Part shown: positions 8,369-15,255 of the stretch, in pieces
Numbering within the stretch: position 1 is the stretch's first letter
How the letters are laid out: every line of letters starts with the position of its first letter
The notes under the pieces: generated by a model
Told to the model about the DNA's origin: nothing
The model's database searches: none
What the model saw: only the letters and a program-made list of their open reading frames with translations
Origin: Styela clava
Taxonomy: Eukaryota
Reading direction: 5' to 3'
Length of the DNA: 64,000 nt
Assembly: GCF_964204865.1 (NCBI RefSeq)
Contig: NC_135252.1
Location: 3,596,001-3,660,000 of the forward strand
Program-made: the position numbers and the translations under genes

Positions 8369-9668
8369 TACTACACCAACGGCACGTAGTCAAATAGTTT
8401 TACTAAAATTTATGTTTTTGAACATGTAAACCATATTTTAAGCGCCAACTCTCCGAACAAGCAAATTCTGTTTTGTTTTATGTTTTTCTATATTTTATTA
8501 AAAAAAAGTTTAGTCTATTTAAAAGCCTGTCCATGCTTTATTATTCTCTCGTAAGTGGCCGAAAGGAATCAATGTAAATTAGAAACACACGATATTGGCA
8601 ACCGTCACCTTTGTTTTGAACAAAATTTCTCCTCATTCTCTTTCCTTCTTTTGTAGTCTACCAGTCAGTAAAACTCCACAACAACGCACACGTTCAAATA
8701 CCGCACATACAAATAATTCGTTCGTTTTCAGCGTTGTGCTTTGCTGTTTTATCTTTGATCAATCGTGTATCCAATAAACAACCAATGAATTGCGTGATTG
8801 ATTTTAATGCATAAACGTGGAGCTAATATCGTTCAGGTCTGTACCAAATACGCAAACGGCTGATGGGCTTATAACTGCGGAAAATGCAAAGTCCATGAAT
8901 ATTCTTCAATATTCCGAAATTTTAATCGCTCATGAGATTGATAAAAGCGAATTAAAGTGGCCTAAGGGAAAAGTGACAAACATTCATTAATTCAACTACA
9001 AAATGAATAAAAAAAACGCGCAGTGGAGCCGAGCATTTTTTAATCTTCCATGTATACCTCAATCGACAATAGGATTTATGTTCTTTTTGCAACAACAGAC
9101 AAATAACTATTCTTTTGATATGCACTGATAATGATTTTAATGAGAATTTCATGTTCACCGTATATCGATGAATCGTATTCATTCTATGCTCAAACTACCA
9201 TCGGTTCGCATGGAATGTCAAAAATTAAGAAGAAATTTTGCCGACACTATATAAGAAGCTTTTCCTTCCGCTTAATTGTTATGGTATATCCCATCATCTG
9301 ACACAATTCTATGTGCGGCAACAATATGTCATCTTTATATATAGGAAGAAGGCATCAGAACACACCATATGCAAAATGCAGTCGGTAAGATGATCCCGCA
9401 CCATACACACCAGTATTCAATACAGAGAAGTAGTACTCGTCGAGTAAGAAGGGGGTTATAAAGGCTGATAAAATTGGCGAATATGTTTTTGATTACATAC
9501 TCGTATATCAGTTTGTATAGATTTTATACGAACAGAATTGGCTAGATCAGATATTGCTTTTTAAAATGAAATGAAAATAGAGTATCGAATTATATAAATC
9601 ATTACAAACTGCTAAGAATCTGAAAAAAAAAACAGAAAATATAGAAATAATCTAAATATATCAATATC

Positions 9669-12600
9669 ATGGCGAAGACATGTGGAGCTGGAGTATTGAA
9701 ATGTCTGATTCTCGTAATAAACACCATTATGTTCCTCGGAGGCCTGTGCCTTGCTGCAGTATGTAAGTATTTATAGCGACAAATTTTCTAGAAAATTGAT
9801 AACCGACAATGTATATATAGCAAGCTTTCCAATCCGCTTACGGTTGACGACAAAAATTCAAATGTTCTGAACTAAATGTCCATTATTGTGAAAAGAACAC
9901 TAAGTCATGACTTTTGAAGCATTTTTTTTATAATTTTCATTGATCAATGTATTTTCAAAGTCGCTGTGTGTCGTTTTGGACGTGTACTAATATTCCATAA
10001 TTTTTGCACGTAAAAATTAAAATCCATATTTTGAAATCTTCATAATTTGTTTAGCTGGATATACTGCATTCAACAAGGAAAGTTTTTTACATCAGATGAT
10101 ATACGGAGCCAAAATACAAAATGCAATGACGGGAATCTATATTCTGTTCGCAGTCGGAATCGTGATGGCTTTAGTTTCGTATGTATATACTCATTTAACG
10201 CATTACAAAATTCGGTGACGACATTTCTAATATGTTTTTCTCTGGCTTACATTCTCATTGATGTTGATAATTAGACTGCTTATTCACTGTAAAAATCATG
10301 GATATTATTATCTAAAATAGTGACAAATTCTATATCGTTTTTTAAACCCTAAGGTTGTTGAAAAAATTTTATATTAGATATTCTTTGTCCGACGTAATCT
10401 TTATAGTTAATCCTCATTCAAAATTTTACAAACGTATTGCAGAATTCTCGGATGTGTTGGAGCTGCAAATGAAAATAAATTGCTCTTATGGATAAATTTC
10501 TTCTTTATTCTTCTCATATTCATTATGGAACTTGTGGCTACTATATTATGCTTTTACAAGTACAAAGCTGTCGAGGTAAAACATGTTATTGTATGATTCC
10601 GAGTTTTGTTTTATTATGTAGAACACAGTAATTGTGAATTACCAAATAAAATATATCGGTAGAATATAGTACCGAGAACTGTAGTTTTTATTCAGATTAT
10701 ATGTATATTTCTCAACAACAGAAACATTTGAATTTCATACGTATAAATATGAATAATTTAAAATAGCCTCTCCGCGCCACAGTTCATTCTAAGAATTATT
10801 TTCATCCAAACTTAAAAATGGGAAACTAAACACGGTCGTGACCATTCAAAGGAAGTAGATTTTTTATTAAAAATGTAGAAACGGTTCCCATTTACTGTAA
10901 TTGTTGATAGCTTTAACCCGATGTTTAAATCCAAAATGATATTACGCAACATCGAACAAGAATCTAAGTTTCCAAATGGCAGTGCTGAGTTTTGCTTTAT
11001 CGTGGGGCATTCAGTTCAGCTTCTAGCAAAGGTACATACTTAAAATACGCACCCGGTTCAGGTTAATTATCCGTACTTCATTTTATAATGTGTATTGTGA
11101 TCTTATTTTTAATATCATTCCTGAATATTTTATTACAACTTCCGAATTACGTTTACCTGTTTTTACAGAAAGATGTCTTGACTACAATCAAAGATAGTTC
11201 TCGACTACATGCAAATGAAACATCTGCCTTGGCTCTCGTGAGTAAACAAGTTATTTATAAAATTATCTAACACCCAGAGACATGGCAGGTAGATTTGGGG
11301 AAGGGGCAACGTTATATTGAAATGTCAAATCAATTTGTCTAGATCATTTTTGACCGCTTTCTTTAATAGTATATAAATCAACTGAGATATTCTGTCTGTA
11401 AAGTTAATACATATAACCATGGCTCCACGGTCAGATGAGTTGAATATGCCAAGTATAATCATTTCATCGTTACATATTCCATCAGCGTTAATGAAAATTT
11501 GGGATATTCGACTGACAACCAGAATATATAAAATCATCCCACGTTTCCTTGGTTCACTTCCGTATGGTAGGTTTCAGTGTTGTGTCAAAACAATATTGTG
11601 AGTTTAACAAGTTACATAAATATACGTTATATGTTGATGCATGTTGGCAACTGGTCAAACAGTAATAATATTCATTACTTTAGAATAAATACACGGCAAA
11701 GAATACACAAATAAGAAAATCCCAGAAATAAATGTAATTCAGTCCTGAATCCCCTAACTAAACAATTTTCACATACATTTGTGTTTTCCAATCAAGTCAG
11801 TATAAACAATTGTTCAAATGCAATCACAACTGCGTTGCCATGAAAAACAATATTCAGTTTATATCATGTTTGCTTCTGATTCTGCATAAAAATAAATGAG
11901 GTCTAAATAATGTACTATTTTCACAGGTGAGAACAGTTTTGTCGCATATTGAATCGTCTGGAAAATGTTGTGGACTGCATGGTCCCAAGGACTACGGGGA
12001 CAAAATTCCTCAGTCCTGCTACGCACCCGCACCTGTGACAAGCAGAACTGAAAACAGAAAGTCATCTTTGGCTGATTCAGAGTATGTAGCAATAATAGTA
12101 TTCATAGGTAGTTGATACACCTGCTTAAAATTGGTGCATTCGATTAAACTACATCAGACAACATGAGTTATGCTTCGTGTAAGTTTTACATAAATTGTAA
12201 CACTTGTATCGTTTACCTCGACAATAAAGTAACTTCGTACGAAACGCTTTTTTCTGGGTAAATCGTGGAGCTCGACATATATATGTCTTATTGTCGATGA
12301 TTCAACCGCAAATAAAACTCAGAGTGCTAAGCTTCAGGAAGACAGACAACAACGTTCTGATAATATATCTGTTAATTTGATTTTCTTTTAACCCAACAGA
12401 ATCGATTTGTGTCATACATAACATCATCCATGTTATTTGTACCACCGGCCATTTTATCCGTAAATTGTTTTCATTCTTAGTAACCCATCAAATGACGCAC
12501 CTGTGGAATCAGGAGGTGAATTAGGAAGTAACCCGGTAGCGGCAAACGGTAAGCAACAAGTAAACCTTTAGTACCACTGCTACATCAAATAAAAATAAGT

Positions 12601-14129
12601 TGTCATAATTATTTTTCATACATATCAGCACCATTGTCCATGTCTGCATCGCCTTCTTCTACAAGCTCTACTGCTTCTTCAACCTCGACCACTAGTTCCC
12701 CTGGAAGCCCAATTTCTTCCTCCACAACAACTATTCCTACTACAACAACTATTCCTACAACAACAACTATTCCCACTACAACAACTATTCCTACTACAAC
12801 AACTATTCCTACTACAACAACTATTCCTACTACAACACCAACTTCAAGTTCGCGAGCTGCAGAAACTCCAACAACAGAAATTTCTGAGCCTATACCGGGT
12901 TTGATCGGCGCAAGTACTGCAAGTGCAAGAAATAACGTGACAGTCCCGTCACCGACGGAAATCATTACCAAATTGAGAATACTAACAACAGCTGTCGAAG
13001 AATTATCAAACGCCACCGTATTACAAACTACAGGTAAAGTTTCAACTGTGATTTCACACCTAATCGTGACACATTAACTACTGGGCTATTGCTTTGGCTA
13101 AAGCTTGTTGCTGTCGCTAGTAGGTTATTTACTTTTACTTATTTCAAAATTATATATGTGTGCTCTATTTATGGGATTCGTTTATCACTTCGAAGTTTTG
13201 TTTGATGGCGTCATCAAAATTAAAAAGTTCGCGCCGTGCCATGGTTCCTCGATCACATCTCAGTGATCTGGTGGTTTGACTACTTACTGGTACTGTAAAA
13301 TATTTGATACTGCGGTAGGCCTACTTCGTTTTGGTCGTCGTGTCCATATATTTGAGCATTGCTCTCTTTAATGTTTCACAGCTCTCATATTAATAGGGAT
13401 TTCAGAAATAAAGGACAATTTTCGTTCTTTTAACTTTGGTAAAGGACAAGGGCAAAAAAGCTGAATAAAGGATGGTCCTTTTAAATGAAGGTTGCTTGGC
13501 AACCCTGGTTTATGTTGGGCAATTTTTTACATGTGTCCTTACTTTCTATTGTTACGTCATAATGGTATTTGTTTCTGCTAGTTTCACAATTTAAATGCCG
13601 ATGCAAAAAACAGTTGAAAGAGTCGTAGTCAACACTAAACTACGTTCGTTCATTCATGTAATTTTTTATTTAACTTGAGATCAAATTTTTTTGTGTTGCT
13701 GAGCTCTGCAACTGACATTAACTTAACAATAAAAGACTGAATTTGGTGAAGGTTGATTCAAGTCTAGAAATATTTGGTAATATACGTACCAAATGCTTAA
13801 TTTAATTCATCACTTAAAAGTACTCTCAGGTGGAGGTCAACATCGTTCAGATTGTTGCAGAAGGTGTTCCCCTTCTATGCGCTATTAGGCATGGAACAAA
13901 CATGTTTCAACTGCTGACTCTCTGTTTATATTTTATAGGAAGCAACGGTTTGCAGCCAATCAAAACCAATCGACGTCCATACACCGTGGGATGTGCGGCA
14001 AAATTGAAGCCATATGTATACGCCGCCGGTGGTATAGCAATCGGCATTTTGATTCTCGAATTACTTCTTCTGATATGCATAGGATGTCTTCTTTGTGAAA
14101 TTGGAACTGGATATGAATCTCTGGCCTGA
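9669..14129 (+). CDS. Tetraspanin (CD63-like C-terminal GYxxL), ~412 aa, with mucin-like insert in EC2
   Basis: Exons 9669-9762, 10055-10178, 10443-10575, 11169-11237, 11927-12081, 12481-12548, 12629-13033, 13939-14129, all phase-compatible. Four hydrophobic helices, ILGCVGAANEN after TM2, CCG, PQSC, final GC before TM4, C-terminus GYESLA. Confidence 0.88.
12723..12838 (+). repeat. Coding 18-bp minisatellite (ACAACAACTATTCCTACT) x~6.5 encoding (TTTIPT)n
   Basis: Tandem array directly visible inside tetraspanin exon 12629-13033. Confidence 0.95.
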
Positions 14130-15255
14130 TAGTGACATTGCAATGATGACGATTCAGTGAAAAGAATTTCTATTATATACACTTTAAAAATATTTTGTAA
14201 ATAAGGATTTCATTTTACCCTTTTGCTTTAGTTAAGTTTCCATTGCACATATTACACAAGTAAGAGAGTAATCAATGTAACAAATAAAGATATGATATAA
14301 TAAAGATGCCCTGAGATTTCTGCATTTGCTTTATCTCCGACGTCAACATTTCATTTATGTATTAGACAAATCCTCCCATACGTTTATTGACGAAGTATGC
14401 GGTGACAGGTGATAGGCCTACTACCAAAAGCCTGAAGCAATAGTAAAACCCCATAATATTCAATTTTGCGAAGAATTCAAGTTAACGAATGTGAACGTAT
14501 CAGAGCAATTAGACCTGATATTATATTAAACTATTTTACAAAAAGCAGGTTTCTGCACAACCAGGTTCATATCGCCAAATAGAGAAATGCCTGATTAAGC
14601 TATAACTTGAAAAGACATCACGTATGTCATTTTCATTGCATATGTGTTCTTACAATATCTTTCGTGTGTTTTACTAAAGTCACTAAAATATGACACAGGG
14701 CGTGTCTGTTTATTAACAAACTTCGTGCACGCGAGGCGAGTAACTGTTGTAAAGAACAAAGTTGTCAAAAAATTGTTCAGTTGGTCGATCACCTTACAGT
14801 TACAATGCCAATAAGAAGGAATCGGACATGTTTTTGAAAAGCTAGGGACAGTTTTGGCGGTTTAAAGGTGGACAGTGTTATGCGCGAACATTACTGTATA
14901 TTATCCTAGTTAGTGAATTCGATTTATTTAGTGGGTACGGTAATTTGAGTTAACGGCCCAGTTTAAAACGTTAAAAACCGATAATTACTTTTAATTTTTT
15001 AATCGGGTAACTATTCCTGCTTCAAATATTTCCCATTTCAAAAATAAAAAAATAAATACGGTCGAATGAATAAATTTGTCTTAATATGAAAAACTGCCAT
15101 TTTAACCTTAATAATGACGACATACATGTATCCATGAAATTCATCACGTCTATATCATTATGTCGCCCAGTCTGTCTGGAGTTTGAAATTCAAAAGTATC
15201 CTAATGAGACCGACTACCTCGTGGTCTGAGTGTCTCGTTTTCGCATACTCTATAT

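What the first reader, a model, noticed from the sequence alone, without database searches (positions are those of the whole stretch)
11927..14129. Tetraspanin with a ~195-aa mucin-like stalk inside its large extracellular loop
Seen: between PQSC (exon 11927-12081) and the last EC2 cysteine (YTVGC, exon 13939-14129), two phase-compatible exons add a Ser/Thr/Pro-rich segment with (TTTIPT)n repeats and an NVT sequon. The protein ends in GYESLA. Established: the EC2 variable region of tetraspanins is normally a few tens of residues, and GYxxPhi is the CD63/LAMP endolysosomal sorting signal. Inference: this is a tetraspanin-mucin hybrid presenting a heavily O-glycosylated loop closed by the EC2 disulfide, possibly a lysosomal or extracellular-vesicle glycocalyx or adhesion protein.
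Basis: partly seen in the sequence, partly recalled or inferred. Interest (0 to 1): 0.8.

Follow-up and report, generated by a model that had tools for sequence, protein, structure and literature searches.

The report
Sea-squirt tetraspanin with mucin-like loop
This is a real, transcribed four-pass membrane protein (a tetraspanin) whose outer loop carries a long sugar-attachment-type Ser/Thr/Pro stretch; sea-squirt relatives share the layout, public databases hold them under generic names, and I found no paper describing it.

Summary
An 8-exon gene (ATG 9669, stop 14127-14129, + strand) encodes a 412-residue tetraspanin. No exon-skipping joint was seen.

There are 196 residues between the third EC2 cysteine (PQSC) and the fourth (YTVGC). 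Exon 7 supplies the mucin-like core: 74% Ser+Thr in its best 50-residue window, and six TTTTIP units from an 18-nt tandem repeat.

The layout is a family trait. An unnamed transcript protein (P0003) and Ciona intestinalis "tetraspanin-9"/LOC100181415 have 123-143-residue T-rich inserts at the same spot. A Ciona savignyi fragment (H2YBU3) is also T-rich there. One relative has only 22 residues. Every sequence that reaches its C-terminus keeps G-Y-x-x-[L/V/I] there.

The AlphaFold model of P0003 has a confident tetraspanin core, closest to CD9, and a disordered insert.

Glycosylation, cellular location and function are untested. My best reading is an O-glycosylated loop pinned at both ends on a tetraspanin that cycles through endosomes or lysosomes. 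I class it as a new variant of a known kind, of moderate interest. The scan's only other note on this feature is the same stretch of the same genome. The spliced protein was never joined; exons were searched separately.

The parts
9389..9668 (+). 5' UTR as covered by RNA contigs; in-frame stop at 9648 upstream of the ATG
   Evidence: Contigs start at 9389-9415 and run unbroken to 9762. Upstream stop and no earlier in-frame ATG.
9669..9762 (+). Exon 1 coding part: start codon, short N-terminal tail with Cys residues, TM1 (with the polar Asn)
   Evidence: Translation and hydropathy maximum 2.46. Joint 9762>10055 in 4 runs.
10055..10178 (+). Exon 2: small extracellular loop and TM2
   Evidence: 55% identical to P0003 residues 33-72. 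Joint 10178>10443.
10443..10575 (+). Exon 3: inner loop (ILGCVGA) and TM3 with Glu
   Evidence: PF00335 34.5 bits, profile 62-102, above the 32.1-bit cut-off on its own. Joint to 11169.
11169..11237 (+). Exon 4: first part of EC2, NET sequon
   Evidence: Joints 10573/5>11167/9 and 11237>11927.
11927..12081 (+). Exon 5: EC2 with CCG (11966-11974) and PQSC (12008-12019), then the first 20 residues of the insert
   Evidence: PF00335 26.3 bits, profile 133-179. Joint 12081>12481 in 4 runs.
12481..12548 (+). Exon 6: 68 nt, acidic/Gly-rich linker of the insert
   Evidence: Joints on both sides in 4 runs.
12629..13033 (+). Exon 7: 405 nt, Ser/Thr/Pro-rich core (51% S+T overall, 74% in the best 50 aa), NVT and NAT sequons, less biased last ~35 aa
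   Evidence: Unique in the genome. Joints 12547/8>12628/9 and 13031/3>13937/9.
12724..12837 (+). 18-nt tandem repeat, 6.3 copies, encoding TTTTIP units; 6-nt in-frame insertions next to it in some RNA contigs
   Evidence: TRF score 214, 95% matches. Units listed. Insertions at 12837 and 12841 (table 4).
13939..14129 (+). Exon 8 coding part: last EC2 cysteine (YTVGC, 13980-13994), TM4 with Glu, tail GYESLA (14109-14126), stop 14127-14129
   Evidence: PF00335 17.9 bits, profile 177-223. 52% identical to the P0003 C-terminus. Hydropathy 2.95.
14130..14800 (+). 3' UTR (continues beyond 14800 in two runs)
   Evidence: Contigs run from 13937 unbroken to 14800 and on (table 8).

Best explanation
A single-copy gene, probably of an ascidian, encodes a 412-residue four-cysteine tetraspanin. 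The short variable sub-loop between EC2 cysteines 3 and 4 has been expanded to 196 residues by two extra exons and an internal 18-nt repeat. SHOWN: the exons are spliced into the main mRNA. The core is a tetraspanin. The insert lies exactly between the parts of the Pfam profile and removes nothing. Relatives in Ciona and in another unnamed species carry T-rich inserts of other length and sequence at the same site. Every family sequence that reaches its C-terminus ends in G-Y-x-x-[L/V/I], with the Tyr about 6 residues after TM4. INFERRED: by homology with CD81, the two ends of the insert are pinned side by side to the adjacent cysteines of the CCG motif. The insert is therefore a closed, disordered loop on top of the EC2 stalk. 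In the Golgi it is densely O-glycosylated on Ser/Thr, plus 2-3 N-glycans, and stiffens into a bottle-brush hairpin that reaches far beyond the usual tetraspanin ectodomain. The (G)YxxPhi tail is read by AP adaptor complexes, so the protein is internalised and/or sorted to late endosomes, lysosomes or related vesicles. There the glycan loop acts as a protective or anti-adhesive coat on the luminal (equivalent to outer) face. This would be a tetraspanin counterpart of CD68, endolyn or the LAMP hinge. The confidence given is for the whole mechanism; the architecture alone (expressed tetraspanin with a conserved PTS insert) I hold at about 0.9.
For: The gene model is phase-consistent, with GT..AG at every intron. 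All seven joints are present in contigs of 4 runs from 3 studies. Pfam PF00335 matches exons 3, 5 and 8, with exon 5 ending at profile 179 and exon 8 starting at 177. There are four hydrophobic segments, plus the CCG, PQSC and GC motifs. The PTS core has 58% S+T and 13% P over 100 aa, with six TTTTIP units. Relatives P0003, P0005, P0009 and P0010 carry inserts, with Cys3-Cys4 spacings of 143, 123 and 128 aa in the three full-length ones. P0003's best matches in this genome all lie in the window gene. The GYxxPhi tail is present in all 7 family sequences that reach the C-terminus. In the AlphaFold2 model of P0003 the TM bundle and stalk have pLDDT 70-89, while insert residues 187-312 are below 50 with no secondary structure. 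The best structural and sequence matches in the PDB are CD9, CD53, UPK1B and CD81. (G)YXXPhi signals of CD63 (GYEVM), LAMP1 (GYQTI) and cystinosin (GYDQL) bind AP-1/2/3/4 (PMC5297682). Indels seen in the coding repeat are multiples of 6 nt, while UTR indels are 1, 2 or 4 nt.
Against: No glycosylation, localisation or tissue data could be obtained, and run names are coded. No O-glycosylation predictor was available. The YxxPhi motif is followed by one extra Ala here, unlike CD63 and the LAMPs. From my own knowledge, many plasma-membrane tetraspanins also carry YxxPhi tails, so the motif does not prove lysosomal residence. The Ciona inserts are Thr/Ala-rich (30% S+T over the whole insert, 35% in the best 100-aa window, 29% Ala), which is less mucin-like by strict criteria. 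The structure model is of a relative, not of this protein, and rests on a shallow 9-row alignment (mean pLDDT 62). Contigs cannot exclude a minor isoform without exon 7, which would stay in frame.
Confidence: 0.5

Rival explanations
1. It is a cell-surface mucin-type tetraspanin. The glycosylated loop works at the plasma membrane of an epithelium or blood cell as a barrier, lubricant or anti-adhesive spacer around tetraspanin microdomains. The YxxPhi tail only sets the rate of endocytic turnover.
For: The architectural evidence is the same. The core is closest to CD9/CD81, which are surface tetraspanins. The motif is not at the very C-terminus here, in P0003 or in P0004.
Against: Gly-Tyr at about 6 residues from the membrane near the C-terminus, conserved in every sequence that has the tail, is the pattern of lysosomal membrane proteins (PMC5297682). 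From my own knowledge, CD9 and CD81 have no such tail.
Confidence: 0.3
2. The insert is a tolerated, largely neutral low-complexity expansion (replication slippage inside a permissive loop) with little or no dense glycosylation and no function of its own. The protein works as an ordinary tetraspanin.
For: Insert sequences are not alignable between species, and length varies from 22 to 196 aa. Each species has its own repeat. One family member manages with 22 residues (P0004). Other tetraspanins of this genome also have modest S/T-rich additions of about 55 aa in the same sub-loop.
Against: A long T-rich insert is kept at the same site in at least three or four species that are only 45-59% identical in the conserved core. 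Composition stays Thr/Ser/Pro/Ala-biased although the sequence changes. Indels stay in frame. Any exposed luminal stretch with 74% Ser/Thr is expected to be a GalNAc-transferase substrate (inference).
Confidence: 0.12
3. Exon 7 is an optional cassette, and the main protein is a tetraspanin with only the short exon 6 linker.
For: Exon 7 is 405 nt, a multiple of three, and joining exon 6 to exon 8 recreates the same Gly codon.
Against: No 12548>13939 joint appears in any of four runs, while the inclusion joints appear in all four at the depth of the neighbouring exons. Relatives' transcripts and models include the insert.
Confidence: 0.04

Closest known systems
Ciona intestinalis 'tetraspanin-9' (XP_018671832.1 / A0A1W2W6B4, 340 aa), C. 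intestinalis LOC100181415 (345 aa), Ciona savignyi H2YBU3 (fragment)
   Same: Same family: collinear, about 45% identical in the TM and CCG exons. 4-Cys EC2. A 123-128-aa Thr-rich insert between Cys3 and Cys4 in the two C. intestinalis proteins. G-Y-x-x-V at the C-terminus.
   Different: The inserts are Thr/Ala-rich with other repeats (TTAPKVA in C. savignyi). They are shorter and cannot be aligned to this one. Ciona has a dibasic RNKR/RRKR site just after Cys3 that this protein lacks. They are known only as automatic predictions with a generic name.
CD9 / CD81 (vertebrate 4-cysteine tetraspanins)
   Same: Four TM helices; CCG, then C, then C pattern ('4-cys CCG--C--C = CD81 family', PMC2965184). 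They are the best sequence matches (6k4j 1.9e-14, 5tcx 1.7e-12), and CD9 is the best fold match, for the relative P0003.
   Different: From my own knowledge, Cys3-Cys4 spacing in CD81 is about 14 residues, against 196 here. They have no PTS segment and no GYxxPhi tail.
CD63 (LAMP-3)
   Same: A tetraspanin with a C-terminal GYxxPhi signal (GYEVM) that binds AP-2, AP-3 and AP-4 and directs it to late endosomes and lysosomes (PMC5297682). It is heavily glycosylated.
   Different: CD63 has a 6-Cys EC2 (PMC2965184 Table 1), N-glycans only and no mucin-like insert. Its motif is at the very C-terminus.
CD68/macrosialin, endolyn (CD164), LAMP-1/2 hinge
   Same: Functional analogy: a luminal mucin-like O-glycosylated segment combined with a short cytosolic YxxPhi tail on endolysosomal membranes (own knowledge; LAMP tails in PMC5297682).
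   Different: They are single-pass type I proteins with unrelated folds. The mucin segment is a free N-terminal stalk or a hinge, not a loop closed by disulfides on a four-pass protein.
Membrane-tethered mucins (MUC1 type)
   Same: PTS tandem repeats with length polymorphism, presented on a membrane anchor.
   Different: They are single-pass, with SEA or other cleavage modules and hundreds to thousands of repeat residues. Here there are about 100 residues, anchored at both ends.

Membership tests
Tetraspanin (Pfam PF00335) | Match to the family profile | tested here: met
Tested exon by exon. Exon 3 scores 34.5 bits (cut-off 32.1), exon 5 scores 26.3 bits and exon 8 scores 17.9 bits. The matches are collinear at profile 62-102, 133-179 and 177-223.
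Tetraspanin (Pfam PF00335) | Four transmembrane segments with polar Asn (TM1) and Glu/Gln (TM3, TM4) | tested here: met
   Hydropathy maxima are 2.46, 2.07, 2.81 and 2.95 in exons 1, 2, 3 and 8. Asn, Glu and Glu are visible in the TM1, TM3 and TM4 stretches. Only a simple Kyte-Doolittle window was used, not a dedicated TM predictor.
Tetraspanin (Pfam PF00335) | CCG motif and at least two further conserved cysteines (PxSC, GC) in the large loop | tested here: met
   KCCGLHGP, PQSC and YTVGC are present. Exactly 4 Cys lie between TM3 and TM4.
Tetraspanin (Pfam PF00335) | Tetraspanin fold | tested here: inconclusive
   The fold was shown for the relative P0003 only (model pLDDT 70-89 in the core; Foldseek top hits CD9, CD53, UPK1B, CD81). 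The window protein itself was not folded because its exons may not be joined.
Mucin-like (PTS) domain | High Ser+Thr and Pro content over about 100 residues (rule of thumb from memory: at least 40% S+T and at least 5% P) | tested here: met
   The best 100-aa window has 58% S+T and 13% P. The best 50-aa window has 74% S+T.
Mucin-like (PTS) domain | Tandem repeats | tested here: met
   18 nt repeated 6.3 times with 95% matches, giving six TTTTIP units.
Mucin-like (PTS) domain | Luminal/extracellular position, accessible to Golgi GalNAc-transferases | tested here: met
   It lies inside EC2, between TM3 and TM4. The topology is inferred from the family.
Mucin-like (PTS) domain | Dense O-glycosylation actually present | not testable with these tools
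   No predictor or experimental data were available.
(G)YxxPhi endolysosomal sorting signal | G-Y-x-x-bulky hydrophobic in a cytosolic tail close to the membrane | tested here: met
   GYESL, with the Tyr at the 6th residue after the TM4 hydrophobic stretch. The consensus is given in PMC5297682.
(G)YxxPhi endolysosomal sorting signal | Conservation in relatives | tested here: met
   GYKSLA, GYTPV (twice), GYEKVEE, GYNSLA, GYIGIA and GYEAV.
(G)YxxPhi endolysosomal sorting signal | Motif at the extreme C-terminus, as in CD63 and LAMPs | tested here: not met
   One extra Ala follows the motif (GYESLA). Whether this matters is unknown.
(G)YxxPhi endolysosomal sorting signal | AP-complex binding and lysosomal localisation | not testable with these tools
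   This needs cell biology.

The most novel reading that the evidence does not exclude
The EC2 loop of this ascidian tetraspanin family has become a fast-evolving, length-polymorphic glycan display module. It would be a 'loop mucin' anchored at both ends, a type of membrane mucin not described so far. It would serve cell-cell recognition (gamete, blood-cell or self/non-self discrimination) rather than only as a passive coat. The hints are species-specific repeats, 22 to 196-aa length variation between relatives, and in-frame 6-nt variants among individuals.
Probability: 0.12. Interest if true: 0.75.

Novelty: new variant of a known kind. Interest (0 to 1): 0.5.

Why it matters
[quoted passage not shown] Here a whole family lineage has turned the small variable sub-loop of EC2 into a repeat-containing, mucin-like module by gaining exons, while keeping the rest of the fold and a sorting tail.

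If the loop is O-glycosylated, this would be a membrane mucin held at both ends on a four-pass scaffold. That is a different geometry from all single-pass mucins. It would also show naturally that the Cys3-Cys4 loop tolerates inserts of about 200 residues, which is useful for engineering display on CD9/CD63-type vesicle markers.

The finding also corrects a silent annotation: the Ciona relatives are filed as plain 'tetraspanin-9' or 'uncharacterized'. It is a lineage-specific curiosity and does not solve any open problem, so I rate its interest as moderate.

Tried and rejected
1. The word search with whole P0003 was swamped by low-complexity words and returned only itself and a hemichordate CD63-like protein.
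2. The repeat of that search on residues 1-192 was wasted because I set the E-value limit too strict, at 1e-8.
3. The third search (Ciona, residues 1-186) found only Ciona proteins. The taxonomic spread of the family is therefore poorly sampled.
The source organisms of P0003, P0004, P0006 and P0007 remain unknown.
5. The big search with exon 8 found no 100% self hit. This gene's own predicted protein is either not in that library or hidden behind a 50%-identity representative. I could not check by exact look-up because that needs the joined sequence.
6. I asked whether other tetraspanins of this genome with large open frames carry EC2 mucin inserts. They do not. The arrays on C4, C6, C10 and C18 have long C-terminal cytoplasmic tails and only about 55-aa S/T-rich sub-loops.
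7. I asked whether exon 7 is a copy of a mucin gene or a mobile element. It has no other copy in the genome.
8. Rfam found nothing in 9000-15000. The high RNA depth in the last intron is a dispersed repeat, not an RNA gene.
9. Six literature searches for a mucin-like or Thr-rich insert in a tetraspanin loop, or for ascidian tetraspanins, plus one for Styela clava tetraspanins, found no description. PMC3510090 mentions apomucins and tetraspanins as separate genes.
10. Searching, folding or looking up the full spliced protein as one sequence was left out.
Full report
**What is in the sequence**

The + strand between 9669 and 14129 holds eight exons that fit together in phase:
- E1 9669-9762
- E2 10055-10178
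- E3 10443-10575
- E4 11169-11237
- E5 11927-12081
- E6 12481-12548
- E7 12629-13033
- E8 13939-14129

The ATG at 9669 is preceded by an in-frame stop at 9648, with no earlier ATG. Counting whole and split codons gives 412 residues.

Every search with window sequence was done exon by exon. Fold and full-length comparisons used database relatives instead.

Yes. One search for public runs found nine low-share holders (0.23-0.33 of the sampled words, about the exonic share of the stretch) and four high-share DNA holders.

Contigs of four of the low-share runs, from three studies, were laid on 9200-14800. They carry all seven joints, each GT..AG:
- 9762>10055
- 10178>10443
- 10573/5>11167/9
- 11237>11927
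- 12081>12481
- 12547/8>12628/9
- 13031/3>13937/9

One contig of 1024 nt (run X5) links E1 through to the first part of E7. Others link the second part of E7 to E8 and the 3' UTR. The runs are only guessed to be RNA. But spliced contigs cannot come from this genome's DNA, because exon 7 has a single copy and hence no retrocopy exists.

No joint skipping exon 7 or exons 6+7 was seen. Skipping both would break the frame (68 + 405 nt). Skipping exon 7 alone would not, and contigs cannot exclude a rare isoform.

Contigs break inside the 18-nt repeat (12753-12796). Three of the four runs show in-frame 6-nt insertions at 12837 or 12841. Indels in the UTRs are 1, 2 or 4 nt.

**Is it a tetraspanin?**

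Pfam PF00335 matches:
- E3 at 34.5 bits, above the family cut-off on its own
- E5 at 26.3 bits
- E8 at 17.9 bits

The matches are collinear. E5 ends at profile position 179 and E8 starts at 177. Nothing of the family profile is missing, so everything between is extra.

There are four hydrophobic segments with the usual polar Asn/Glu/Glu. The CCG, PQSC and GC motifs are present, as are membrane-proximal cysteines. Exactly four cysteines lie in the large loop. Among vertebrate tetraspanins that is the CD81-type pattern (PMC2965184).

**The insert**

Between the Cys of PQSC and the Cys of YTVGC lie 196 residues. They come from four pieces:
- 20 residues from the end of E5
- an acidic/Gly linker (E6, 27% S+T+P)
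- E7
- 17 residues of E8

E7 is 51% Ser+Thr overall. Its best 50-residue window is 74% S+T with 12% Pro. Its best 100-residue window is 58% S+T with 13% Pro. It contains six TTTTIP units from an 18-nt repeat with 95% matches. It has two N-glycan sequons (NVT, NAT), and E4 has a third (NET).

The last ~35 residues of E7 are less biased. The mucin-like part is therefore about 100 residues, not the whole 196.

**Relatives**

The full-library search with the E8 peptide gave seven hits. Four matter here.
- **P0003** (368 aa) comes from a transcript assembly and is unnamed. It is collinear with the window exons at 52-59% identity in the TM exons (E1-E3, E8) and 59% (20 of 34) over the CCG part of E5. 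Its best matches in this genome are all in the window gene. It has 143 residues between Cys3 and Cys4, with poly-Thr runs.
- **P0005** is Ciona intestinalis XP_018671832.1 'tetraspanin-9' (340 aa), with a 123-residue Thr/Ala-rich insert.
- **P0004** (248 aa) has only a 22-residue Pro/Ser/Thr/Ala linker.
- **P0006** is a C-terminal fragment with a Thr/Ala/Lys-rich stretch before the GC motif.

A further search added two more:
- C. intestinalis LOC100181415 (345 aa, 128-residue insert)
- C. savignyi H2YBU3, a fragment that breaks off inside TTAPKVA repeats

The inserts share position and composition but cannot be aligned. The flanks align well. Every sequence that reaches the C-terminus ends in G-Y-x-x-[L/V/I], sometimes followed by Ala or Glu-Glu.

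The only named close relatives are Ciona proteins, which supports a tunicate origin of the window. I did not test that.

**Structure**

AlphaFold2 was run on P0003 with a 9-row family alignment. It gives pLDDT 70-89 for the four TM helices and the EC2 stalk helices. Residues 187-312, which are the insert, score below 50 with no secondary structure.

Foldseek ranks CD9 (6k4j) first, then CD53, UPK1B, Tspan15 and CD81. phmmer against PDB sequences ranks CD9 and CD81 first.

From published CD81 structures (my own knowledge; the reference is cited within PMC2965184), the two cysteines of CCG pair with Cys3 and Cys4. Both ends of the insert should therefore be pinned next to each other. That step is inference.

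**How common is this?**
- In this genome, Pfam finds at least 40 tetraspanin exon matches.
- The ones with suspiciously long open frames were fetched. They turned out to have long cytoplasmic C-terminal tails, with only about 55-residue S/T-containing sub-loops.
- Exon 7 has no paralogue.
- Six searches for a mucin-like, Thr-rich or repeat-containing insert in a tetraspanin loop, or for ascidian tetraspanins, found no such description. A search for Styela clava with tetraspanin found no paper.
- The one paper holding all the terms treats apomucins and tetraspanins as separate genes.
- A global survey of PF00335 proteins could not be run.

**Mechanism**

Shown: an expressed, conserved tetraspanin with a disordered, Ser/Thr/Pro-rich, repeat-bearing loop and a conserved (G)YxxPhi tail.

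Inferred:
- The loop is densely O-glycosylated.
- AP adaptors read the tail, as for CD63 GYEVM, LAMP1 GYQTI and cystinosin GYDQL (PMC5297682).
- The protein therefore resides in, or cycles through, endosomes and lysosomes, where the glycan loop acts as a protective or anti-adhesive coat.

The main rival places the same molecule at the cell surface. A neutral low-complexity expansion is less likely, and a cassette-exon explanation is disfavoured by the RNA data.

**Limits**
- One word search was wasted by my own too-strict threshold.
- Run and organism names are coded, so tissue of expression is unknown.

**Verdict**

The architecture reading is supported and the functional reading is open. It is a new variant of a known kind. 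The family already sits unnoticed in public protein sets, but its peculiarity appears undescribed. Interest is moderate.

Noticed in passing
window 13180-13370 (last intron of the gene): A ~190-nt dispersed repeat. The first look gave 916 candidates in the genome, and scored copies are 73-87% identical. It explains the very high RNA-contig depth (up to about 2000) and the many loose ends at 13321-13372. Probably a SINE- or MITE-like element present in many transcripts. No Rfam match.
   Followed up: partly
P0005 and P0009 (Ciona intestinalis) just after Cys3; P0010 (C. savignyi): The Ciona relatives carry a dibasic RNKR / RRKR site, matching the furin-type consensus, a few residues after the PxxC cysteine at the start of the insert. 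If cut, the loop would be opened while the disulfides hold the two halves together. The window protein has ENRK there, and P0003 has nothing similar.
   Followed up: no
window 12837 and 12841: In-frame 6-nt insertions (CCAACT in one run, CTCCAG in two runs) beside the tandem repeat in RNA contigs. In addition, all contigs break at 12753-12796. This suggests allelic length variation of the repeat region between individuals.
   Followed up: no
window 14174: All four RNA runs lack 4 nt of the 3' UTR relative to the assembly. This is either a fixed difference of the sequenced individual or a small assembly error.
   Followed up: no
G000 C4:17.80-17.82 Mb and 18.37-18.38 Mb, C10:14.387 Mb, C6:7.58 Mb, C18:13.07 Mb (L002-L006, L008): Tandem arrays of an unusual tetraspanin subfamily. 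Its last exon encodes CCG to PQSCC, a ~55-aa S/T-containing sub-loop, TM4 and then a ~200-residue cytoplasmic tail ending in ...SLE(G/D)W. Another note of this scan (s1-822989) may refer to one of these arrays.
   Followed up: partly
G000 C17:14377989-14378765 (L007): An intronless 6-Cys CD63-like tetraspanin gene whose tail ends in EYEHVA. This is again YxxPhi followed by a single Ala, as in the window gene.
   Followed up: no
P0002 (4092 aa): A very long protein that matches the exon 8 peptide (GC motif plus the start of TM4) in eight separate stretches. It was not fetched or examined.
   Followed up: no
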